From Rebecca billardiae RCC1528 (Eukaryota > Protista > Haptophyta), in assembly GCA_965240325.2 (NCBI GenBank), contig OZ251233.1:1612001-1676000 (forward strand): a stretch of DNA of 64,000 nt. The letters are read 5' to 3'. A program made the translations under genes and the position numbers. Of the stretch, positions 670 through 23,260 are shown piece after piece. The stretch's first letter is position 1. Every line of letters starts with the position of its first letter. The notes under the pieces are model-generated. The model made no database searches. It was not told the origin of the DNA and saw only the letters and a list, made by a program, of their open reading frames with translations.

Positions 670-1358
670 TTAGTTGAAGTACGAGAGTTGCTCCGCGCCC
701 GGCGCCGCCTGCTCAACGAGCGTGGCGGGGCCGCGCGAGAAGGGCGGCAGAATGCCGGGCCCGCACCAGGTGTGATGGCTGGGCAGCCGATCGAGCTGGG
801 CGGCGTCGCTCCCGCCGAATGCACGCGTGATGCGCGGTTGCCGCTGAGCCGCTGCGGCCGTTGACGACATACCCGCGGCGCAGCGCGGCGGGAGCGCGAT
901 GCCCTCGTGCGGATGTGACGTGGCCGGCTGGCTGGCGCCCACGCCGTTGCTCGCCTCCAGCGACGTGGGCGGCAGCTGGCCGGGCGCGAACGCCCGGCCG
1001 ACGGTCACAGGTGGGCGGCGTTGCCGCTGCTGCGCCTGCTGCCCTGCCTGCGCCGGCAGTGCAACGACGTTGTTGCCGCCCGGCCCCGCCACGATGACGT
1101 GCGCCTCCCCGGCTGGCTTTTGGTGCCCGCCCAGCTCTGCATTGGCGCCCGTCGCCGCGGCCGCGTGCGCGAGCACGGGCTGCCCCTGCCCCTGCTGCGG
1201 TGGCGCGAGCTGCGCCGCCTGCATCAGCTGCGGCTGGTAGCCATAAATGGAGCCGCCGATGAACAGGCTGTCGCGCATGCCGCCCACGCCGGCCGGCGCG
1301 GGCGGGGCGGGGCAGGCGCCGACGTGCGGCGCCGGCTCGGCGGAGGGCTGCTGCGGCG

Positions 1359-1393
<35 letters not shown>

Positions 1394-1606
1394 GACGGCG
1401 ACTGCTGCGGATGGAACGGCTGCGGCTGCTGGAAGAGCACGGAGGTCGCCCCCTTCCAGAACGCAGACACCTTGGACTGGTCGAGCAGCGCGGGGGTGGT
1501 GCCGTAGGAGGACGCCAGCACGGCGCCTCCGCCCGGCCCACCGGCGTGCGCGTGCATCGGACCGAGCATGTTGAGCGAGAGGCACTGCTGCTGCCCGACC
1601 ACCCCG

Positions 1607-1651
<45 letters not shown>

Positions 1652-2223
1652 AGGCCGCCAGCCAGCAGCAGCGCGCGGTGGTCCCCGTGCATCTGCACGC
1701 CATGCTGGTGGCGCTCTGCCACTGCGGCAGCAGCAGCAGCTGCTGCTGCCGCGGCGGCGGCGCGATGTGGCTGCTGCTGCGCCACCGCGTGCACCTTGGG
1801 GTGGATCGGGAACGCGGGCACTGATGAGCTCTGCATCGCAATCGCTCCGCCCGGCCCACACGCCACGCCACCCATGCCAAAAGCGGCGTGCACCGCGCCG
1901 TTGCACGCGTCAGGGAAGTTGAGTTTGCGCCCAAGGATGCGCGCTTGTGAGTCGTACGCCCGTGCCGCCTCCTCGGACGACGAAAAGACGCCCAGGTGGA
2001 TCGTAGAGCCGTTGATCGAGATCTGCGCCTGCCAAAAGTTGGATGACGCGACCTTGCACGCGTACACGCCCTTGTACTTGATGCCGTGCTTGCGCTGCTT
2101 CTTCGACGCGGGCCCATTGGCGTCGTCCGCGGCCGCATCGCCCCCCGCGTCCTCCGAAGGCGCCGCCGCGGCGGCCTCGCCGTCGCGTTGGTCGGCGGCC
2201 TCGCCGTCGCGTTGGTCTGTCAT
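670..2223 (-). CDS. AP2/ERF-domain transcription factor with polyQ/polyA low-complexity tail
   Basis: N-terminal KYKGVY...WQAQISINGSTIHLGVFSSSEEAARAYD...LNFP is the AP2 domain consensus, preceded by basic KKQRK; Q-rich region follows. 3' exon structure not verified. Confidence 0.88.
1361..1652. repeat. Two (CTG/CAG)n tracts encoding polyQ in the AP2 protein
   Basis: Uninterrupted ctg runs at about 1361-1393 and 1607-1652. Confidence 0.9.
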
Positions 2224-3913
2224 TGGCGTAGTTGGATAGAGGGCCTGTCGTTCCTTCTACCGACTCCAAGTTGATGGCGCGCGGCACGAAGCGATCGACG
2301 GAACATGCCCCTTCCTTAAATCTCGCGGGTAACAAGGGCCCTTGCCGGGTAAGGAACAAGCGATGCAATTCGACGGTGATTACGATGGATGAACCAATCC
2401 TCCAAGCACCCGCCCGAGACTGACGGTTCGGGGGGTAAAGGTTCGGTATCGTTGTTCAGCCCCGTTGCTCAAAAGGCCGCCGAACTGGTGGCGCAGAACC
2501 CCAAGAACTTGCGAGAACGCATCCTATTTCCGATATTTTGATAGTATTGCCCTGAGTCCTAGATCCTCATTTGAGTGCAGCAACCAAATTCAGGTTCCCA
2601 CGTATATGGTGAACGAACGACACTATATTCATCAATAGTGAGCCATATTCTCACAAGATCCGGGGGTTCACGTGAAGAGTTGTACAGAACCTCCGGAGCA
2701 CTCCTACACCACTACGTGTAGCGGAGATGAGGATCTCGCGCCGGTTGAGCCGTTAATCAATTATCAAGCGTTTGCGGCTATGACCTTTGGCGGTTGAATT
2801 CGCTTCATGCCGAGTCACAATAATATGAAAGGGGGTTTTCCGTTTTCAGCCGATGAGAACAGACCTTTCGATTTGGACTAATAACTGAGTTCAAGTAGCT
2901 TGGTGCTCACAAGCTCAGCCTAGCTATGTATGGGGGTACAGCGCAAACCCGCGGAGACCAGACTGACGGAGCAAGGGCTGTCGCCCTGCGGCTCTGCGCT
3001 CAGTAACACTAGTGACTAGACAGTGAACAGCTGACACCGTCAGGCAATCCAGCGGACAGGTGACGGACTCCGCCCAGACTCCTCGGCCACTCGGAGTAAC
3101 CGACCAGCGGCTCACCAGTGGGCAGTGGCACGCCGATCGATGACTGGTCCGCGGACTGCGGCCTGACGGAGCGGTCCGCCACTGTACCGAGTGAGTGTAC
3201 GGGTCTCCGCCGGTCTCGGACTCTGAGCATGCCTCTACCGATCGAGTACGGAGTAGCAGGTGACGGAAGGTCAGCACTGAGGACTCATCGGAGCTGCACT
3301 ACAGTCCAAGTCGATGACTACAGTACGATTCATCACCGCCCGAGTATCGTCTTGTTCAGCGGTCCGTCACTCGCAGACTGTGACTGTGTCAGGCTCAGGC
3401 TGCGACGGTCCGACGACTGACTGTACTCAGTACTGACGTCGGAGGCGGGACGTGAGTCGTGACCCGGGTCCGGGACGGGTTAGTCGGGTTTTGCCCGACT
3501 CGCCGACGGTGTCGGTGTCGCGGCCGGGTGAGCGGGCACTGAGCCGCGAGGGCCGGTGGCGGTCGGGCCGCGGGGTCGGAGACTCAGAGTCGGAGAGTCC
3601 ATGCCGCACGGACGGGCAGGACTCGTAACATTAATAATAATAAGTTACATTGAACCGAGGATGACATGTAATTTAGTCTAAATGTCTCATCACGTCGACT
3701 ACGAGTGTGAGTCTCAGTCAGAGTCGTCGGACCGACGGATGACGGAATCAACCGTGTAAGACTGCGTGCCGGCATCCGTAACGGCGGCGCATGACGAGCC
3801 CCTCCCGCCCTCCGGCCTGTACTTGTAGTCGTCCCCGCGTCCACGACCTCCCCTTCCGCAGCGGCGCCGGAGGGCTGCAGCCTGCAGAGTACACGGGACC
3901 CGTGCCCGGCGGC

Positions 3914-6900
3914 TCAGTAGACCGTCCCCATCTGGACGGGCACGTCCGCGACGACATCAACGGCGTAGCCACCGCGCACGCCCGCGTCCATCGTCGCGGG
4001 CAGCAGCACGTAGCACGCGGCCGCTCGTGCGGGCAGCAGCAGCGTCGCGCGCACCGCCTCGGCGGGCGAGAACGCGCTCTCATAGAGAACGTCCGCCTCG
4101 GCCTTCGACGCGAAGCGCAGCCGCTCGTGCGGCCCGTCCGCGCCGAGGGACGCCGGCGCGACCAGCAGGTAAAAGCCAATCATGGCCGCCGTCGCGTCCC
4201 GCCGCCGCTGCTCGGCCCACGGGTCCGCGCCGCCGCCCGCCGGCGCGCGCGCGTCCCTGGCGCGCCTGAGCTCGACCGTGACGGTGGCCCAGCCCGCGTC
4301 GCCGTGTGGCTGCCCGTCGCCGTCCTCCTCGGGCGGCGGCGCGCCGCCCACGTGCAGCAAGTGCTGCGGGTTGAGCCACCACTCTGCCCCAGCGACTGCG
4401 TGCGAGCCGCGCGCGCTGTCCACGCCCTGCGCGGGGTCGGTGCGCCACGCGCCGCGCACGCCCGCCGTGTGCACCTTGCGCGTGCGCGTGAGGCGAAGGG
4501 GCGCGGCGGGCGTGGCCGCGCCATCCCAGAACGCGTGCACGGTGCACGCCGCGCCGCGCGGCGCCGCGCCCTCCGCCGCCTCCTCGCCGTCGAGCGTTGG
4601 CGCAGCCGAGGCGGAGGGCACCACCGTGTACACAAGGCCTCGGCCAAGCCGAGCGGAGAGCTCGGCGCTCGCGCGCGGCGCGGCGCGCGCGGGCGACCGC
4701 GCGCGCGGCTTGTTGGTCCTTGGGCGCGGCGCTTCGTTGCCCTCGTCGTCCAGCTCGCCGCCGTAACCGCCGTAACCGGAGTCTGCGACGACGTGCGCGC
4801 TGTCCAGGTACACGCACGGCCGCGCGCCAGCCTCGGCGCTGGCCGCCGCCTCAGCCTCGGCCGCGCCGCCGCCGCCCGACGCGCCGCCACCCGGCGCCCG
4901 GCCGGCAGCGCCGCGCCTGAACCGCGCGAGACCGCTCGTCGCGACGGCGAGCCCAGCGACGGCGGCTGCCTCCGCTGCGTCCGCGTCCGTGGGCGCGCCC
5001 GCGGGCGCGCCCGGCGCGCCGCCCGCTCGGCCGTGCTCGCCGCCGCCCCCAGCCACGCCCGCCCCGCCATACAGCGTCGATCGGACGCCCACGCCCACGC
5101 CCAGACGGCCGCTCACGCGGTCGCGCGCTGCGCCGCCGGCCGGCAGCGCGCTCTCAGCCGCCGAGACGGCCGCGTCGGCGGCGGCGGCGCGCACGCGGAG
5201 GGCGACGCTGTCGCTGGCGCGCGCCGCCATCGCCGCCTCCGCCGAGTCGAGCACAGAGTCCGGGTCCTCACGCAGGTAACGCCCGGCGCCCAGCAGCCCG
5301 CGAGTGCTGCCGCTCACACCCGCGAGCAGCCGCGCGCGCGTGCCGCCTCGCTGCGAGGCTAGCCACGGCGCGCGCGCGCGCGCCGCCTCGGCCAGTGAAG
5401 CGCTCGCGCGCGCGGCGGCGTGCGCGTCGGCCTCGGCCGCGCGCGCGGCTGAGGCGTCCGCGGCCGCCTCGAGCGCGCTCGAAGCGCCGCCCGGCAGGCT
5501 CAGCCCGAGCTTGGCAGCGGAGAGGTGGGGCTGCTGCCTGTGCTGCTGCTGGGAAGTGTGGTGCGGTGCCGCAGTGGGCGCACGGAGCGGCGCCGGGGCG
5601 CCGAGGGTGGCGGTGGCCGCGCCGCCGTGCGCCGCCCACGGACCATCATCGGCGTCGTCCACGTCCGAAGCGTCGGTGTGCGCCGGGTGCGGCGGCTGCA
5701 GGAGCACGTGCAGGCCCACCGCCGACCGCTCGGCCGCCGTGCCGCCCTCGGCAGCACCAGCCTCGCTCGTCAACACCAGCTGCACAGCCACAGTCCCACC
5801 GCCCGCCGCGTCGCCACCGCCGCCGGCCATGTCCACACCTCCGCCCCAGTCGTTGACCGCGCGCGCGCCGTGCGGCACGCTCAGTGCGAGCTGGGGGTTG
5901 GTCGGCCACCAGAGCGAGGGCGGCGGGCCGGCCGGCGTGGAGGGCCACGCGCAGCGCAGTGCCACATGGCGCAGCCGGGGCACCGGCGAGACGTGCACGC
6001 CGGCCGGGCAGTCAGTCCACACCCGGAGGACGAAAGCGCATGCTCGCGCGCCGCGGTCGGAGTCGTCGCCGCTGGGCGACGCGCGCGCCGCCGGCGTCGC
6101 GGCGGTGCGGCGCGGCATGTGGCGCAGCTGCGGGACGACGGTGACCGTCTCGCCGCGGCGCAGCCGCAGCCGCACCACCGCCTCCTCTCCCGCCGCGACG
6201 AGGCCGGACGCCGCCAGCTCGCCCTCCGCGCGCGCCGGCGCGCCGCCCGGCGCGCCGCCCGGCGCGCCGCCCGGCGCGCCGCCCGGCGTGCCACCCGGCC
6301 AACTGACAGCCGTCGCCTCTGCCATGGCCCCACTCCATTTTCGCGTGCGTCCGCGCGCGCAGGCGAAGGCGGTGAGCTGCGCGAGGCTGCCCGCGTCGGC
6401 GCCGGCGGGCGCTGGCAGCGGCAGCACCGAGACGAGCACCACGCCGCCGCCTGCGCTCGGCTGCGCGTCGTCGGCTCCGGCGCCGCGCGCACCAGACGGC
6501 GTGGCGGGTGCGGAGCCCAGGGCAGCGGAGGCGGAGGGCGCTTGCACCGACGACGCCGCGCGCGGCAGCGAGACCCACCACTGAGGCGCCTCGCACAGCG
6601 GCGCGGTGGGCGGCTCGCCGGCGCGCGCGCGCACGCACCGCGCCGCCCACGTGCCGACGAGCTGCACGCAGTGCCACGCACGCCCGACCTCCGCCCCTCC
6701 GCCGCCGGCGCCAGGCGCGGCGGACGGCTGCGCCTGCGCTCGCGCCGAGGCCGGCCGCGACGCGCTGAGCGACGGGCGCGCAGCGCCGCGCGCCGAGCCG
6801 GGGCGCGCACTCGTCGCTGGCGCGGCGGGTGCGTACGCGGCTGGCGCGCGCGGCGAGGCGCGCGGCGCGTGGAAGTGGCACAGCGTCAGCCTCGTGAACT

Positions 6901-17593: not shown

Positions 17594-18780
17594 GGCCGCC
17601 AAGTTGAGCTCCTTTCCGCGTACACGCACGTCACCTGGCATGAGCACATCTTGAACCAACCAACCGTTGTGAACCGACTTATGAGCAACACGCGCTTGTG
17701 GCTATTGTCAACACCACTCATACGCTTAATTGCAATGCCTCCATCGAGATGACGATGATTCCGTGCATCATCAACGATCGTCGCGTAAGGCGTCAATCAA
17801 TGATCAGTCCGCGCCGCGGCGACGACGGCCAGGCGCAGGCGGGAATAGACAATTGTGAAATGTCTCGTCGTTGGAATGATTCATCCGCGGGACCGCGGCC
17901 TGCGCGGCCGCCGCCGCCGCATAGTCGGTCGAATCGCAGGATTAAGCCGTGAACAAGCACTCAGCACGTCGGGTCCAGGTCCCGCGCCCGCGGCCGACGG
18001 TCGGACGGATGATCGTCCGCCGCGCCACGCGTACCTCTGGCGCCGCGTGCATGGCCGACTCAGTGCGCAAGCGCAGCCTATAGAGCTAGTCATTATGCAT
18101 TCATTGCGTCGCTGACTGTGCGGCCGCGCCCGTACTACTACTGCTACTGAATTGAACGCGAAGTTATCCGCCGCCGCAGTGTAGTCACTGACGAGTCAAT
18201 ATTCGCCGCCCGTCAGCAGTCGTATTGCGCCGTGGTCGCGTAGTACATTCGTATAATAAACTCTCATGCCACGCTATGCCGTCTGCTATGACTGTGAGTT
18301 ACTGTACGGGCCCGCCGAACGGGTCACACGTGGTCGCGATCAAGGGGCTAGTTTATCGGCAGATCGACGGCATCAGTTATTGAGAATACACAGCATCGCT
18401 CACATCGGCCCGGGTCTACTTGAACCTACCATTGATGGCAGCGCTCGGCCTCGCGACCTAGTGCCTCGCCATCACTGCGTCAGGCCTCACTTCGGCTCTC
18501 GGTCCTCGTCGTCAGCCGCATCAGGCTGGGGCACCCGAGCTCGGATCGGCCAGGTAGTCAGCCGCTGCCGGACTGATGAGAGTCGCACGCTGTCGCACCG
18601 ATGATCGGGCGCAGTATAATCTACCGCGTTCGTTGATGAGAAAATCGCTTATTAAATAGAACAGCAGCGCGCGCGCTGCTCAGCGCTGGTCGAGTTCAGT
18701 AGTACGAAAATCGCAATACAGTACTGGTAACCACGATGGTATATATATATCTACTGCTGCTGTATTTTTATAAACTAACT

Positions 18781-18832
18781 CCCTCTCTCTCTCTCTCTCT
18801 CTCTGACTCTCTCTCTCTCTCTCTCTCTCTCC
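18781..18832. repeat. (CT)n microsatellite
   Basis: Interrupted ct dinucleotide run seen directly. Confidence 0.9.
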
Positions 18833-19239
18833 TTAGCGCCGACTGTACCGAGCCCTAGCTTACCTGAACGGTGCGCGGCGCGCGCTGGCCCGCGCCCACC
18901 GCCACCGGGGCCGCCGGCCCGACCCGCCTACAACTCGCGCCCTCCGGCTGTGCTGCGGCGCCGGAGTGACTGAGACTCGGTGTGAGTACCCGCCGAGGTC
19001 CAGCAGCGCGATATATTGGCGTCATATTGGCTAGCTATAGTCCGGCCTTAGTAGTCCGGTCCTACTCGGTTTAGCGGCCGGCCTAGACGGGCCCGTCAGG
19101 CCGCAGTCTGACACTAGTGTCACTGACAGGTAAATGCTGTCGTATAGTTATCTCGTCACTATCTATCTGCTCGAACGGCCGGCGCCCCGACGCCGACTAC
19201 CGCGGCGGTCACTAACTTATTAAACTATATATATATATA

Positions 19240-22200
19240 AGGTGCTGACGCTCCTGCCCGGGCTCCTGCTGTGGCAGCCTCTGCGCGGGGGCCGCGGCCG
19301 CGCGACGCGGACCATCGAGCGCCGCTTCGGCTTGTGGGACCGCGGGGAGCTCGACACGCTCGTCGACGAGTGGGCGCAGGAGTGCCGCCGCTCCGCTGAC
19401 GAGGCCGCCGTGGGGGGCGGCGAGGGGCTGGGAGACGCGCAGCGCGAGGTCAAGCGCGCCACCGAGCTGCTGGCGAAGGGCGAGGTCTCGGCGGCGGCGC
19501 GGCTGCTCGAGAGCCACGGCCTGGCTAGCATGCAGGACCAGGCCGTACAGGCGCAGATGCGCGCGAAGCATCCGCAGCGCACGTACTCGCTCGACGGCGT
19601 CCTCGACGACGACGCCCTCGACGACGCCGCCGAGTTCATCATCACGGCCGACGACATTAAGGAGGTGTACCGCGGCCTGCCGCGCGAGAAGGCGGCTGGG
19701 GCGTCGGCGTGGCGGTTTGAGTACCTCACGGCCGTCGCGCCGACCGTGGACTTCCCCGACGACAAGGCCGCCAGCGCCCCCGAGGCGCACGCCGCGTTCG
19801 CGACGCTCTTCCTCGACAACCGGCTCCCGGGCGGGTTCAACCTCACCTTTGCGTCCGTGCGGCTCATCCCCGTGCGCAAGCGCGCCGCGAGCGCGGCCGG
19901 CGCAGAGGACGCGCGTCCGGTGGGTATCTCGTGCGGCCTCCGCCGCGCGCTTACGCGCTGCCTGCTCCGACGCGCGGACGTCAAGGAGATGCTGGAGTCG
20001 TACCTCGCCCCCCTGCAGCTCGGCGTCGCTGTCCCGTCGGGCGGCACGAAGCTCGTCTTTGCGATTCGCGAGCTGCTGGACGCGCACCCGGACTGGGTTC
20101 TGATCTCGTGCGACATCCGGAACGCCTTCAACGCGACGCTCCGCCGGTCGATCATCCGCGCGGTGTCGACGGCCGGCGAGCTGTCGGCGCTGACGCCGCT
20201 CGCGCTCGCGATGCTCGCTCCCAAGGCGCGCGTCTTCGACGGCGGTGGCGGCACTGGCCAGCCCATTCGGCAGCTCGACTTCCTCAGCGAGGAGGGCGTG
20301 CAGCAGGGCTCGGTCGAGGCAGCGGCCTTCTTTGCGATCGCGCTCCAGCCGCACCTGCGCGCGCTGGACGAGCGGCTGCAGCCGTGCGGGGGCGCCGCAC
20401 GCGCGGGCCACGACGATGTGAGCATCATCGGCCCGCCGTCCGAGGCCTTCCGTGCCCTCCACGAGTTCGCCGCCGCCGTGAAGGACTCGCTCGGCCTGGA
20501 GCTGCAGGTCGCCAAGACCAAGTGCTACATCCACCCGGAGTACGACCACCTGCTGGACGAGCACCGGGGCGACGTGCCGCGCGGCACGCTGACGGACGCA
20601 GACGGCGTCGCTCACCACGGCGTCACGGTGTATGGCGTGCCCGTCGGGACCGAGGGCTACGTGGCCACCCACCTCTCTGACAAGTGTGCCGAGATCGCTG
20701 GCATCTCGAACAAGCTGATCAACAGGCTCGGCTCGGCGCACAAGCAGGGGCTGTGGGTGCTCACGCACTACTCGACCTCGACGAAGCTCGACTACTTCCT
20801 CCGCCACATCGAGCCCGACGCCACTGCCGAGGCGTGTGAGCGGTTTGACGCTATCATCCTCCGGCAGGCCGGCGTCGCGCTCGGCTTCCCCACCGACGAC
20901 CAGCTCGACGACATCATGCTGCAGCGGCTCCGCCTGCCCGTCCGCCTGGGGGGGCTCGCCCTGCGCTCGGCGGCGCAGCGGGCACCCGCCGCCTTCTGGG
21001 CGGGGGCCCACGCCGCTGTTCCCGCGTTCCTCGACCGCCACGCCCCCATGCAGGGCGGCGTCGCCGTGCACGGCGTCCTCGAGCGCGACTCCATCGTCGC
21101 GCGCGTGGGCCGTGACGCGTTCGTGGACATGCGCGCCGCCGGATGGCGCCAGTTTCTGCAGTCGGGCTCGGCGCTCGGGCGGACGCTCGCGACCATCTGG
21201 GAGCGCCTCCAGCTCGCCGAGCAGGAGGCGCCAGCTGTGCCCAACCGGCAGCCTTACTGCGTGCTCCACCTCCCGGCGGGTCAGGTGGCACCCACGGCAC
21301 GCCGGGCTGTGGACGGCACCGTCTACTACAGCCTCGCCAAGGACATCACGGAGGACGTCGAGAACACCCACGGCTGGCTCCTGCGGCGGCAGCTCAGCTC
21401 TCTCTCTCGGGACGACCGCCGTGTGCACCTCATCCAGAACGTGGACCGTGCCTCACTCGCGTTCGTGGGCGCGCTCCCGATCGGCAGCGCGGCGGTCCAC
21501 CACCAGGGTGAGTGGCTTGAGATCGCGGCGCGCGCGCTCGGGATCCCCAGCCCGGTCTGCGCGCCGCTGGCCCAGGCCGGGGCGTACGTGCCCACGCGCT
21601 CGGGTCCCGGCATCCGGGTGGACGCGTACGGCGACGCGCTCCTCAGCGCGTCCGGCCGCAACGCGCTCCCCGGCGACCACGTCGCACGCTACCGGCACGA
21701 CCCGGTGATCCGCGTGCTGGCGGGGTTCTTCCGCACGTACGCCGGTGTGTACGCCGTGCCGGAGGACACCTGGATCTTCGGCTCGGTGCACGCCCAGTCC
21801 ACCGCCCAGGCGCAGGCGGTGCTCGGCACGGACCGCAAGCGCGTGCCGGTGGTGGACCTGAGTGCCGAGGTGCACGGCAACTGTACCCTGTTCGAGGTCA
21901 AGACCATCTCGCTGAGCCCGTCGCGCTACAGGGTGAGCGACGGCCGCAACGGTGCGGTGCGCCAGCGCGCGGAACTCGTCCCGCGCGAGCGGCGCAAGCA
22001 GCTGCAGCTCCTCGACCGCGAGGTCTATGGCACGCTTGAGGGCCAGGTGGGCCCATACGAGGCGCGGCTCGACACCTTCCCCGCGATCGTCCCGATTGTC
22101 GTGGGGGCGTTCGGCGAGTGGAGCGCGGAGGTGGACCTCACCCTCAAGAAGATCGCCAAGATGGGGCGGGACACGTGGCGCGCGCGCCTCAGCGCGCCCT

Positions 22201-22590
22201 CGCGCCCCGCCGCCGAGCGCGCGCTGCTCGGCACCATCATGCGGCGCGAGCTGGGCATGCGCTGCCTGCGTGGCCAGGCCAAGATGCTCATCGCCCGCGC
22301 GCGCATGGCGCACGTGCGCCCGGGGGCACGCGCCCGCGGGGGCACTGCGTACGACGACTGCTTCGAGACGACGGCTGACGACGCGTGGCACCGCGACCAC
22401 CGCGGTGGCGCGCGCGCGTCGACGCCAGACGGTGCGTCGAGCTTCCGCTCGGCGATGGAGTGATGGGCGACTACGAGGGGGGGGGGACGACGGCGAGGAG
22501 CGCTGATCCTGGTGTTTGTCTCTGCTGCTCGATCTGCCGCTACAGCTTGCTGACTCTCGGGGCGCCTGCCCGTTGCATACCACGTCGTTA
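19240..22590 (+). mobile_element. 5'-truncated CRE-like non-LTR retrotransposon (RT + restriction-like endonuclease) inserted in (TA)n
   Basis: Open ORF begins right after (TA)n 19226-19239 with no ATG; ~127-nt 3' UTR ends ...CACGTCGTTA followed by (AT)n. Confidence 0.88.
19242..22463 (+). CDS. Reverse transcriptase + RLE endonuclease polyprotein (N-terminally truncated)
   Basis: AAGASAWRFEYL, ARPVGI, YLAPLQLGVAVPSG, DIRNAFN, GVQQGS, GHDD, GLELQVAKTK, LRLPVRLGGLAL; C-terminal RHD...VVDL...FEVKT...VPIVVGAFGEW typical of CRE-clade RLE. Confidence 0.9.
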   Translation: MLTLLPGLLLWQPLRGGRGRATRTIERRFGLWDRGELDTLVDEWAQECRRSADEAAVGGGEGLGDAQREVKRATELLAKGEVSAAARLLESHGLASMQDQAVQAQMRAKHPQRTYSLDGVLDDDALDDAAEFIITADDIKEVYRGLPREKAAGASAWRFEYLTAVAPTVDFPDDKAASAPEAHAAFATLFLDNRLPGGFNLTFASVRLIPVRKRAASAAGAEDARPVGISCGLRRALTRCLLRRADVKEMLESYLAPLQLGVAVPSGGTKLVFAIRELLDAHPDWVLISCDIRNAFNATLRRSIIRAVSTAGELSALTPLALAMLAPKARVFDGGGGTGQPIRQLDFLSEEGVQQGSVEAAAFFAIALQPHLRALDERLQPCGGAARAGHDDVSIIGPPSEAFRALHEFAAAVKDSLGLELQVAKTKCYIHPEYDHLLDEHRGDVPRGTLTDADGVAHHGVTVYGVPVGTEGYVATHLSDKCAEIAGISNKLINRLGSAHKQGLWVLTHYSTSTKLDYFLRHIEPDATAEACERFDAIILRQAGVALGFPTDDQLDDIMLQRLRLPVRLGGLALRSAAQRAPAAFWAGAHAAVPAFLDRHAPMQGGVAVHGVLERDSIVARVGRDAFVDMRAAGWRQFLQSGSALGRTLATIWERLQLAEQEAPAVPNRQPYCVLHLPAGQVAPTARRAVDGTVYYSLAKDITEDVENTHGWLLRRQLSSLSRDDRRVHLIQNVDRASLAFVGALPIGSAAVHHQGEWLEIAARALGIPSPVCAPLAQAGAYVPTRSGPGIRVDAYGDALLSASGRNALPGDHVARYRHDPVIRVLAGFFRTYAGVYAVPEDTWIFGSVHAQSTAQAQAVLGTDRKRVPVVDLSAEVHGNCTLFEVKTISLSPSRYRVSDGRNGAVRQRAELVPRERRKQLQLLDREVYGTLEGQVGPYEARLDTFPAIVPIVVGAFGEWSAEVDLTLKKIAKMGRDTWRARLSAPSRPAAERALLGTIMRRELGMRCLRGQAKMLIARARMAHVRPGARARGGTAYDDCFETTADDAWHRDHRGGARASTPDGASSFRSAME

Positions 22591-22601
22591 ATATATATAT
22601 A

Positions 22602-22677
22602 TTAACGACGTGGTATGCAACGGGCAGGCGTCAGAGTCAGCAAGCTGTAGCAGCAGATCGAGCAGCAGAGACAAACA

Positions 22678-22680
<3 letters not shown>
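22602..22680 (-). mobile_element. Second, inverted ~80-bp 3'-end copy of the same retrotransposon
   Basis: Reverse complement of 22510-22591 with one small indel/substitution patch and one further substitution; (TA)n on both sides. Confidence 0.85.
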
Positions 22681-22719
<39 letters not shown>

Positions 22720-22741
22720 TTAATATATATATATATATATA
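22681..22741. repeat. (TA)n microsatellite interrupted by CGTTA
   Basis: TA run 22681-22717, cgtta, then TA run to about 22741. Confidence 0.9.
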
Positions 22742-23260
22742 ATTTTTATATAATTACTACCGTCCCGGCGGACCGGAGCCCCGTCCGCGGCCGTCCGCCG
22801 TCGGAGGGCGACGCCAGCCGTTAGTTATGGCGCCAGCTATATAGCTCAGCTACTGGCCGGCGCCCATAAAATGGCCGAAGCCCGTCGAATGTGCCGAGGC
22901 ATGCACCGAACGGCACGCAGTCATCCTCGTCACAAAGGCATGACTCACTGTGACATGACGAGTCACGAGTCACGAGACACGAGTCCGCGCGGACCGACCT
23001 GCTGAGTGCTGGCACGGAGTCCTGCGCTGAGCTGTCCAGTGTTGCTCCACAACTCAGCCCAGTGCAGCCTCGGATGAACGGGCCCGTGCGGCGCGCGCAC
23101 GCGTGCCGCACGGCGCGCAGCTCTTCGCACAGCGTGCCTTCTGCCTCAGCTTGACAGGGCACAGCCAGGCCGCCGCGGCTTGCCCTGATGCGGCATGACC
23201 GCCACCATGCGGCGCAGGCGGCAAAGCGTGCCCGCCGAAGTGGCCGCGCACTGGACGCAC

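What the first reader, a model, noticed from the sequence alone, without database searches (positions are those of the whole stretch)
19226..22741. CRE-like RLE retrotransposon that appears to target (TA)n microsatellites, with repeated insertions at one site
Seen: a 3.35-kb copy starts abruptly inside its ORF right after (TA)n and ends GTCGTTA-(AT)n. An ~80-bp slightly diverged 3'-end copy follows in the opposite orientation, then (TA)n containing a lone CGTTA that matches the element's last bases. Known: RLE-encoding non-LTR elements (CRE, R2, R4/Dong, MoTeR) are often target-specific and give 5'-truncated copies by target-primed reverse transcription. Inference: two or three separate insertions hit one TA tract; (TA)n is self-complementary, which would explain both orientations. 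A TA-specific RLE element in a haptophyte may be an undescribed site-specific system.
Basis: partly seen in the sequence, partly recalled or inferred. Interest (0 to 1): 0.85.

Follow-up and report, generated by a model that had tools for sequence, protein, structure and literature searches.

The report
Retrotransposon that inserts into TA repeats
This is a real, recently active jumping gene (a non-LTR retrotransposon with a restriction-like nuclease) that inserts preferentially into (TA)n microsatellites. That target has been reported for DNA transposons, but I found no report of it for this class of element.

Summary
Window 19239-22590 is a 3.35-kb 5'-truncated copy. It is followed by (AT)6, an inverted 78-bp copy of the same 3' end, and a TA tract holding a lone CGTTA.

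The full-length element is 4692 bp with one 1518-aa ORF. The ORF has an N-terminal region with no detectable relatives and an RGG box, a reverse transcriptase, and a C-terminal nuclease whose predicted fold best matches the R2 restriction-like endonuclease (Z 9-10.8).

The genome holds about 550 copies of the 3' end, in both orientations (262/286), mostly tiny (median 286 bp in my sample). Among 53 sampled copies, 53% have (TA)3 within 12 bp of the 5' junction, against 0.3% of background positions. 74% have ATATAT directly after the 3' end. Unambiguous target-site duplications are 9-15 bp (mostly 10-13) and start with ATATAT.

The inverted copy matches the family reference exactly, while the long copy carries private changes. 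They are therefore separate insertions.

"CRE-like" is not supported: there is no zinc finger and no CCHC knuckle, and the clade could not be placed. "Haptophyte" was not verified. No read-level check was possible.

A non-autonomous partner shares the 3' end. The scan's first readers flagged this family in at least seven other windows of this genome.

Verdict: a new variant of a known kind, the microsatellite-specific LINEs.

The parts
19226..19239 (.). (TA)7, the left remnant of the TA-microsatellite target
   Evidence: It directly abuts the 5' truncation point.
19239..22590 (+). 5'-truncated copy of the 4692-bp element (reference positions 1349-4692, 98.7% identity)
   Evidence: blastn against the full-length reference taken from L042. 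The 5' edge is ambiguous by 1-2 nt.
19242..22463 (+). Remnant of the single ORF: the C-terminal 1073 of 1518 aa, frame still open
19905..20531 (+). Reverse-transcriptase core (full-length aa 668-876, catalytic DD at aa 837-838)
   Evidence: Weak Pfam RVT_1 hit (E 0.011). The profile's best PDB sequence hit is the R2 RT (E 0.04). Invariant D737 and D837-D838 in 37 relatives.
21621..21902 (+). Restriction-like endonuclease core: D1240, RHD 1264-1266, E1287, D1318, E1331-x-K1333. No CCHC.
   Evidence: conserved residues; predicted fold best matches the R2 RLE, Z 9.0-10.8; no Cys available for a CCHC.
22464..22590 (+). 127-nt 3' UTR ending ...ACCACGTCGTTA, with private variants in this copy
22591..22602 (.). 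(AT)6 spacer between the two tail-to-tail copies
22603..22680 (-). Independent inverted insertion: the last 78 nt of the element, 100% identical to the reference
22681..22717 (.). TA tract (target)
22718..22722 (+). Lone CGTTA, equal to the last 5 nt of the element. Probably an extremely truncated third insertion.
   Evidence: 7 loci of TA-tract + CGTTA + ATATAT genome-wide against 0 for the reversed control; a continuous series of 5-40-nt mini-copies inside TA tracts.
22723..22741 (.). TA tract, the right remnant of the target, followed by AT-rich unique flank

Best explanation
The locus holds two, probably three, separate insertions of one young family of non-LTR retrotransposons into a single (TA)n microsatellite.

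The family's full-length element is 4692 bp with one ORF: an N-terminal region with no detectable relatives that includes an RGG box, a reverse transcriptase, and an R2-type restriction-like endonuclease.

Inferred mechanism (target-primed reverse transcription):
1. The nuclease nicks the bottom strand at the edge of, or inside, a TA run. The primer therefore ends ...ATATAT-3'.
2. Reverse transcription starts at the RNA end ...GUCGUUA, probably helped by pairing with a (UA)n stretch on the RNA.
3. The top strand is cut about 12 bp downstream, which gives a 10-13-bp target-site duplication that begins with ATATAT.
4. Synthesis usually aborts early, so most copies are tens to hundreds of bp long.
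5. Each insertion regenerates a TA-bearing target, so copies stack.
6. TA repeats read the same on both strands, so copies enter in either orientation.

Shown: the element's anatomy, its copy number, TA enrichment at both junctions, the duplications, the stacking, and the independent origin of the inverted copy.

Inferred: the order of nicks, and whether specificity comes from the protein or from RNA-target pairing.
For: Anatomy:
- Six full-length copies share one 5' end, and each has a TA tract within about 11 bp upstream.
- Five of the six have an intact 1518-aa ORF; the sixth was only partly fetched.
- The RLE fold is supported by Foldseek, where the top 7 hits are all R2 proteins, and by VIA-align, where the only Z>=8 hits are the R2 C-terminal domains.
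- The RHD...E...D...ExK residues are conserved in 37 relatives.

Targeting:
- Copy counts are 257+280 (21-mer) and 262+286 (13-mer) against 0 for the controls.
- There are 347 exact CCACGTCGTTA+ATATAT junctions.
- Among 53-54 sampled family copies, (TA)3 lies within 12 bp of the 5' junction in 28/53 and within 25 bp in 34/53. ATATAT follows the 3' end directly in 40/54. Background is 0.3% and 0.7% (binomial P about 2e-56).
- Unambiguous duplications are ATATATGAGTGAC, ATATATTACGTC (twice), ATATATCAT and ATATATAGCATATAT.
- Mini-copies embedded in TA tracts number 132+38 against 0+3 for the control.

Stacking:
- A tandem array at C1:1713789-1714316 regenerates the 12-bp duplication at each step.
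- Tail-to-tail pairs with 7-12-bp spacers occur at three other loci.

Independence of the inverted arm.

A 42%-identical relative from a metagenome also ends CCGTTAATTA(AT)10.
Against: - About a third of sampled copies have TA only on the 3' side. Part of the (AT)n may therefore be a tail brought or grown by the element rather than target.
- A few copies sit in non-TA sites. One has a clean 12-bp duplication GTGTATCTGAAA and no AT tail, so TA is a strong preference, not an absolute requirement.
- No DNA-binding domain that could read TA was found.
- No biochemical, read-level or polymorphism evidence was available, and no empty-site allele was seen.
- The flank sample (54 copies) is about 10% of the family. 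Thirty of its loci were chosen as best matches to the 3' 126 nt, not at random. The 19-copy subsample from contig C1, taken from hits listed in positional order, gives similar figures (10/19, 13/19).
Confidence: 0.85

Rival explanations
1. The (TA)n is only the element's own 3' tail (as poly(A) or (TAA)n is in other LINEs), and insertion sites are essentially random.
For: 20 of 58 sampled copies have (AT)n at the 3' side only. Examples are copies with 5' flanks in (GA)n, (ATT)n or unique GC-rich DNA.
Against: - The 5' flanks are enriched about 170-fold for (TA)3 (28/53 against 0.3%).
- All six full-length copies have upstream TA tracts.
- Duplications contain target ATATAT plus unique bases.
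- Mini-copies lie inside TA tracts.
- The non-TA insertion with a clean duplication carries no AT tail at all.
Confidence: 0.03
2. The TA association is passive. TA-rich islands would be fragile or permissive DNA in a 68% GC genome, where many mobile elements accumulate. This could happen by selection against insertions elsewhere, or by endonuclease-independent use of breaks at cruciform-prone TA tracts.
For: - Earlier scan notes report unrelated split-repeat retroelements also sitting in TA microsatellites of this genome (s1-360705, s1-357914, s1-365425; not tested by me).
- TA tracts are known fragile sites (titles and abstracts).
- Palindromic duplications around long TA tracts occur here (L014/L027).
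Against: - The precision is at nucleotide level. The 3' end is joined exactly to ATATAT in 74% of copies.
- Duplications have a regular 10-13-bp length, which is typical of staggered enzymatic cleavage. Endonuclease-independent insertions usually lack them.
- Targets with only 6 bp of TA are used, and these cannot extrude cruciforms.
- The nuclease catalytic residues are conserved, and ORFs are intact in five full-length copies.
Confidence: 0.08
3. The inverted 78-bp copy (and the stacked structure) is an assembly artefact, or a fold-back made in one event from the long copy.
For: - An 80-bp palindrome around a TA spacer is the kind of structure that assemblers and polymerases can create.
Against: - The inverted arm lacks the long copy's private variants and equals the family reference. 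A fold-back or a read chimera of the same molecule would copy those variants.
- The same tail-to-tail arrangement recurs at C8:58566/58596, C1:3466460/3466480 and C1:431231/431254.
- The geometry, with the 3' ends pointing inward, is not what twin priming gives.
Confidence: 0.05
4. The element creates many of the TA microsatellites it sits in, by seeding and expansion of its tail, rather than only finding existing ones.
For: - Copies with TA on the 3' side only carry (AT)6 to more than (AT)20 next to non-TA 5' flanks.
- There are ~550 family-1 ends, plus the family-2 copies, against roughly 1800 G/C-bounded tract edges of (TA)>=6.5 per orientation. A sizeable share of tracts therefore touch a copy.
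Against: - Most TA tracts in the window carry no copy.
- Duplications show that TA was present in the target before insertion.
- This reading complements targeting rather than replacing it.
Confidence: 0.15

Closest known systems
R2 (28S rDNA-specific RLE LINE; solved structures 8GH6, 9DOU, 9NL2/3)
   Same: - Single ORF with an RT followed by a C-terminal PD-(D/E)xK restriction-like nuclease.
- The nuclease model aligns to the R2 C-terminal domains at Z 9-10.8.
- The RHD...E...D...ExK motif order is the same.
- Copies are 5'-truncated, and extra nucleotides occur at 5' junctions.
   Different: - No N-terminal zinc finger or Myb domain, and no CCHC knuckle.
- RT sequence similarity is marginal (E 0.04).
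- The target is a dinucleotide repeat, not rDNA.
- It makes a 10-13-bp duplication.
- No ribozyme was detected.
CRE clade (CRE1/2, SLACS, CZAR, MoTeR, FoTeR)
   Same: - RLE-bearing, site-preferring LINEs that insert into repeated targets.
- The REL motif spacing RHD-X20-E...D-X12-E fits the published pattern (PMC12857005, seen).
   Different: - The C2H2 fingers and the CCHC part of the published REL motif are absent.
- The targets differ: spliced-leader genes or telomere repeats.
- Phylogenetic grouping was not tested.
Dong (R4 clade, (TAA)n) and Togen (NeSL-related, (TG)n)
   Same: They are RLE LINEs that insert specifically into microsatellites (PMC3812793, PMC4640811). They are the closest functional analogues.
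   Different: - The repeat unit differs. TA is self-complementary, so here there is no orientation bias.
- The domain set differs: by published descriptions those clades carry zinc-binding motifs.
Micron MITEs (rice) and MuTAnT MULEs (Medicago)
   Same: They target TA microsatellites (PMC3812793, PMC4486113).
   Different: They are DNA transposons that move by transposase, not by target-primed reverse transcription.
Dualen/RandI
   Same: An algal or protist LINE group with an RLE. Some relatives of the present family carry RNase H, and one carries an OTU protease.
   Different: No AP-endonuclease domain was found in any of 37 relatives. Dualen has a CCHC (PMC5029228), whereas this clade does not.

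Membership tests
Non-LTR retrotransposon with restriction-like endonuclease (RLE LINE, broad sense) | Reverse transcriptase with a catalytic aspartate pair | tested here: met
   Weak RVT_1 hit for the query, but 21 of 37 relatives match it, best E 5e-15. The profile hits the R2 RT. D737 and D837-D838 are invariant.
Non-LTR retrotransposon with restriction-like endonuclease (RLE LINE, broad sense) | C-terminal PD-(D/E)xK nuclease of the R2 type (RHD/N...E...PD...D/E) | tested here: met
   The motif is present and conserved. The fold matches the R2 RLE at Z 9-10.8, above all other nucleases, which score 7.6 or less. The model core has good confidence, though the whole-model mean pLDDT is 59.
Non-LTR retrotransposon with restriction-like endonuclease (RLE LINE, broad sense) | No terminal repeats, 5'-truncated copies, target-site duplications | tested here: met
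Non-LTR retrotransposon with restriction-like endonuclease (RLE LINE, broad sense) | CCHC zinc knuckle just upstream of the RHD motif | tested here: not met
   No Cys lies between aa 1220 and 1326. The clade consensus there is VDxxGxxL...G...HD.
CRE clade | RT groups with CRE1, SLACS and CZAR in a phylogeny | not testable with these tools
   No reference CRE, NeSL, R4 or HERO sequences were reachable. All 150 listed relatives are unnamed metagenome proteins.
CRE clade | N-terminal C2H2 zinc finger(s) | tested here: not met
   No Pfam hit at E<=10. There is one Cys in the first 490 aa. No zinc-finger family was found in 37 relatives.
CRE clade | Insertion into spliced-leader genes or telomere repeats | tested here: not met
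   The target is (TA)n.
Microsatellite-specific LINEs (functional class: Dong, Togen, Kibi, Koshi, Mino, Waldo) | Both junctions lie in the same simple repeat far more often than chance | tested here: met
   5' junction 53% (12 bp) to 64% (25 bp), and 3' junction 74-80%, against a background of 0.3-0.7%.
Microsatellite-specific LINEs (functional class: Dong, Togen, Kibi, Koshi, Mino, Waldo) | Strict specificity (nearly all copies in the repeat) | tested here: inconclusive
   10 of 58 sampled copies have no (TA)3 at either junction. Most of those still sit in AT-rich DNA or TA-like sequence.
Dualen/RandI | AP-endonuclease domain together with an RLE | tested here: not met
   No Exo_endo_phos hit in the query or in 37 relatives.

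The most novel reading that the evidence does not exclude
Target choice may be set mainly by base pairing, not by a protein DNA-reading domain. The pairing would be between a (UA)n stretch at the RNA's 3' end (a read-through or templated tail) and the nicked TA DNA. This lineage has lost the zinc finger, Myb and CCHC modules that other RLE LINEs use. If so, it would be a naturally 'RNA-addressed' RLE retrotransposon. Its 38-nt 3' module also mobilises a non-coding partner, and its target could in principle be changed by changing the tail.
Probability: 0.25. Interest if true: 0.8.

Novelty: new variant of a known kind. Interest (0 to 1): 0.55.

Why it matters
Site-specific RLE retrotransposons such as R2 are the model for how LINEs choose and cut targets, and they are now being engineered for gene insertion.

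A young, intact family with these properties gives a simple natural system for one question: how much of target choice comes from the protein, and how much from pairing between the RNA tail and the DNA.
- It prefers a 2-bp self-complementary repeat.
- It lacks every zinc-binding module known from its relatives.
- It makes regular 12-bp duplications.
- It drives a non-coding partner through a 38-nt 3' module.

It also explains a visible feature of this genome. A sizeable share of its TA microsatellites are interrupted or flanked by stacked element ends. This matters for repeat annotation, marker design and assembly checks.

Tried and rejected
The table therefore rests on 54 family copies plus whole-genome pattern counts.
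- Sequence search of the whole protein against PDB found nothing real.
- The N-terminal 270 aa had no homologue and no Atlas hit. The single-sequence model was unusable (pLDDT 37), so no fold search was run on it.
- Atlas on the RT-RLE part gave only generic RVT_1 clusters.
- Rfam found no ribozyme or other RNA family in a full-length copy.
- MFE folding of the 3' UTRs of family 1, family 2 and the relative gave no significant structure (z +1.4, -0.4, -0.2).
- Cluster look-up of ten relatives gave no names, so no clade label could be borrowed.
- Twin priming as the origin of the inverted copy was rejected on geometry: it puts the 3' ends outward, and here they point inward.
- Cruciform recognition as the basis of targeting was considered unlikely, because targets with only ATATAT are used.
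- Dualen kinship was considered because some relatives carry RNase H or OTU. It was rejected as membership because there is no AP endonuclease.
- Literature: no (TA)n-specific LINE was found in the searchable library. Repbase Reports and several reviews are not in that library, so prior description there cannot be excluded.
Full report
OBSERVATION

- A (TA)7 tract at 19226-19239 abuts a sequence whose reading frame is open from its first base.
- That sequence runs to 22590 and ends ...ACCACGTCGTTA.
- It is followed by (AT)6 at 22591-22602 and the reverse complement of the last 78 nt at 22603-22680.
- Then come a 38-bp TA tract, CGTTA at 22718-22722, and a 19-bp TA tract.
- The surrounding genome is 68% GC, and TA tracts are rare in it.

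THE ELEMENT

A search of the window's own 72-Mb assembly with the 5' 400 nt of the copy found only eight places. Six of them extend 1348 nt further upstream to one common 5' end, ATGGCCGACTAGG....

The full-length element is 4692 bp.
- It has a 13-nt leader, a single 1518-aa ORF and a 122-nt 3' UTR.
- Five of the six full-length copies have the ORF intact. The sixth was only partly fetched.
- The full-length copies are 99-100% identical to each other, so the family is young.

The protein has three parts.
- The first ~270 aa have no detectable relative and no usable model.
- An RGG-rich stretch and a KRRR motif follow.
- The reverse transcriptase matches Pfam RVT_1 only weakly in the query, but 21 of 37 relatives match it, best E 5e-15.
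- The C-terminal domain carries D1240, RHD 1264-1266, E1287, D1318 and E1331-x-K1333.

A model of this C-terminal domain has a confident core, with a mean pLDDT of 59 for the whole model. Its seven best Foldseek hits are all R2 retrotransposon proteins. With VIA-align, the only matches at Z>=8 are the R2 C-terminal nuclease domains: Z 9.0-10.8, 143-159 residues aligned, rmsd 3.3-4.4. Other PD-(D/E)xK nucleases score Z<=7.6.

The motif spacing fits the published REL pattern RHD-X19-33-E...(R/K)PD-X12-14-D/E, quoted in PMC12857005. The CCHC knuckle that precedes RHD in that pattern is missing. The protein has only 14 cysteines, one of them in the first 490 residues and none between residues 1220 and 1326. 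No zinc finger, Myb or AP-endonuclease domain appears in the query or in 37 relatives.

IS (TA)n A TARGET OR ONLY A TAIL?

Copy number and orientation. The 21-nt 3' end occurs 257 times forward and 280 times reverse. The 13-nt end occurs 262 and 286 times. The reversed controls give 0. Orientation is therefore balanced, as expected for a self-complementary target.

Flank sample. I examined 54 family copies from 50 fetched loci. Thirty loci were the best matches to the 3' 126 nt. Twenty were the first pattern hits on contig C1, listed in positional order.
- Copy lengths run from 26 to 4692 bp, with a median of 286 bp.
- ATATAT follows the last A directly in 40 of 54 copies.
- (TA)3 lies within 12 bp of the 5' junction in 28 of 53 copies, and within 25 bp in 34 of 53.
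- Only 0.3% and 0.7% of such windows in the rest of this 64-kb window contain (TA)3 (binomial P about 2e-56).
- The C1 subsample alone gives 10/19 and 13/19.
- All six full-length copies have a TA tract within about 11 bp upstream. A few variable extra nucleotides (gcgta, ggtgta, cta...) separate it from the element.

Target-site duplications. Where the TA run in the target was short, the duplications are unambiguous: ATATATGAGTGAC, ATATATTACGTC (twice), ATATATCAT and ATATATAGCATATAT.
- They are 9-15 bp long, mostly 10-13 bp, and begin with ATATAT.
- TA was therefore in the target before insertion.
- It sits at the end of the duplication that is joined to the element's 3' end. In target-primed reverse transcription, this is the priming site.

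Exceptions.
- About a third of copies have TA only on the 3' side. Some lie next to (GA)n, (ATT)n or unique DNA. Part of the (AT)n is therefore probably a tail that the element brings or that grows afterwards.
- One copy lies in a non-TA site with a perfect 12-bp duplication GTGTATCTGAAA and no AT tail at all. Priming can therefore occur without TA, and the RNA can end at ...GUCGUUA.

REPEATED INSERTIONS AT ONE SITE

The inverted arm. It is 100% identical to the full-length reference. The adjacent long copy carries private changes, CTCGGGGCGCC for CTCTGACGCC plus one more substitution. The private variant was seen once among 44 sampled occurrences. A fold-back, or a chimeric read of one molecule, would have copied those changes. 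The two arms are therefore separate insertions.

Recurrence elsewhere.
- The same tail-to-tail layout with 7-12-bp spacers recurs at C8:58566/58596, C1:3466460/3466480 and C1:431231/431254.
- A head-to-tail array at C1:1713789-1714316 shows successive short copies, each followed by the same 12-bp duplication ATATATTACGTC. Each insertion thus regenerates the target.

The lone CGTTA.
- TA-tract + CGTTA + ATATAT occurs at 7 loci, against 0 for the reversed control.
- The looser pattern TATATA-N(0-24)-CGTTAATATAT gives 132+38 matches against 0+3 for the control. The inserts form a graded series of 3' ends of 5, 7, 9, 11, 14... nt.
- An 11-14-nt form ending at the ATA of ...CATACC... recurs at seven or more loci. 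This suggests 5' joining by microhomology with the TA target.

So the CGTTA in the window is most simply a third, extremely truncated insertion. For any single 5-nt match this cannot be proved.

A NON-CODING PARTNER

A second repeat shares only its last ~38 nt with the element. Its long form is about 1.16 kb (L058:3660-4821) and contains 180-bp internal tandem repeats. A ~490-bp short form has a uniform 5' end.
- In the short form, only the final CCACGTCGTTA is strictly kept.
- It has hundreds of first-look candidates in the genome.
- It is also flanked by TA tracts, and it is found stacked with family-1 ends.
- This is the LINE/SINE-like relationship expected if the reverse transcriptase recognises the 3' module.

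RELATIVES AND CLASSIFICATION
- The word-indexed search found only five close proteins, all from metagenomes.
- A profile search found 17,227 proteins at E<=0.001 and 1,410 at E<=1e-30. All of those I looked up were unnamed.
- The closest foreign family (P0002/P0007, 40-42% identity) ends CCGTTAATTA followed by (AT)10. The TA association therefore predates this genome's family.
- More distant relatives end differently. P0004, P0005 and P0008 share CAGGGCGGGGG(A)n, and P0009 ends in poly(A).
- I could not place the RT in the CRE, NeSL, R2, R4 or HERO scheme because no reference sequences were reachable.
- Two features that CRE and the other RLE clades carry are absent: the N-terminal fingers and the CCHC. 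I therefore file it as an RLE LINE of unresolved clade, not as CRE-like.

MECHANISM

What is shown:
- staggered duplications of regular length;
- the junction of the element's 3' end to ATATAT;
- both orientations;
- stacking;
- heavy 5' truncation.

What is inferred:
- that the RLE makes the first nick at the TA edge, so that the primer ends ...ATATAT-3';
- that this primer pairs with (UA)n on the RNA.

Whether the protein or the RNA-DNA pairing sets the preference cannot be settled from sequence.
- The lack of any recognisable DNA-reading module, and the position of TA at the priming end of the duplications, lean toward a role for pairing.
- The tail-less non-TA insertion shows that pairing is not obligatory.

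Passive accumulation in fragile TA islands is a weaker rival. Other element families also sit in TA tracts here according to earlier scan notes (untested). However, the nucleotide-level precision and the regular duplications argue for enzymatic targeting.

NOVELTY
- Reviews and papers in the searchable library list LINEs specific for ACAY, AC, TC, TTC and TAA repeats (PMC3812793) and for TG repeats (Togen, PMC4640811).
- They list TA microsatellites as targets only of DNA transposons: Micron (PMC3812793) and MuTAnT (PMC4486113).
- I found no (TA)n-specific LINE, but Repbase Reports are not searchable here.
- The scan's first readers flagged the same family in at least seven other windows of this genome. 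Those notes agree with this report but are not independent evidence.
- I rate it a new variant of a known kind.

LIMITS
- There are no strain comparisons and no biochemistry.
- The flank table covers about a tenth of the copies.
- The organism was not identified beyond plastid-like, mitochondrion-like and nuclear SSU genes on C41, C40 and C20.

Noticed in passing
L058:3660-4821 (G000:C1:595937-597098); short form e.g. L066:596-1075 (minus strand): A non-coding repeat family has a ~1.16-kb long form with 180-bp internal tandem repeats and a ~490-bp short form with a uniform 5' end. It shares only the last ~38 nt (strictly CCACGTCGTTA) with the autonomous element and is also flanked by TA tracts. 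It has hundreds of candidates genome-wide and is probably a SINE-like partner.
   Followed up: partly
G000:C1:1713789-1714316 (L065): A head-to-tail array of short element ends. Each is followed by the same 12-bp duplication ATATATTACGTC, and the array ends in a truncated family-2 copy. It is a clean example of serial reinsertion into a regenerated target.
   Followed up: partly
L014/L027 (G000:C7:1598141-1598882): Two 184-bp copies lie in opposite orientation around a long TA tract. They have the same truncation point and identical, inverted outer flanks. This is a palindromic duplication of copy plus flank, not two insertions, and it suggests that long TA tracts here mediate inverted duplications.
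   Followed up: no
L029:1917-2863 (G000:C20:721675-722621): About 946 bp lying between two element copies has inverted ends (...aggcctgttttatttct / agaaataaaacaggcc...) next to TA. It may be an unrelated terminal-inverted-repeat element sitting in the same TA island.
   Followed up: no
whole assembly G000: No element copy was listed on contigs C2, C4, C6 or C9 in any search, although neighbouring large contigs carry dozens each. A bacterial-SSU model hit only C41 (plastid-like), C40 (mitochondrion-like) and five nuclear 18S copies on C20. These four contigs are therefore not explained as bacterial.
   Followed up: partly
L048, L054, L076 (metagenome and run contigs of relatives P0005, P0004, P0008): Three families only ~30% identical in protein share a conserved 3' terminal motif, CAGGGCGGGGG followed by A's. 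This suggests a second conserved 3' recognition or target module in a sister lineage.
   Followed up: no
genome-wide, e.g. G000:C5:2793310, C5:2828244, C5:4186068, C13:2322635, C14:1590973: An identical 11-14-nt mini-copy, (ATA)CCACGTCGTTA, recurs inside TA tracts. It marks a truncation hot spot where the element's ATA can pair with the TA target.
   Followed up: no
window 18779-18831: A (CT)26 microsatellite lies about 400 bp upstream of the TA island. The island itself (about 19010-19240 and 22740-22900) is an AT-richer patch in a 68% GC region.
   Followed up: no
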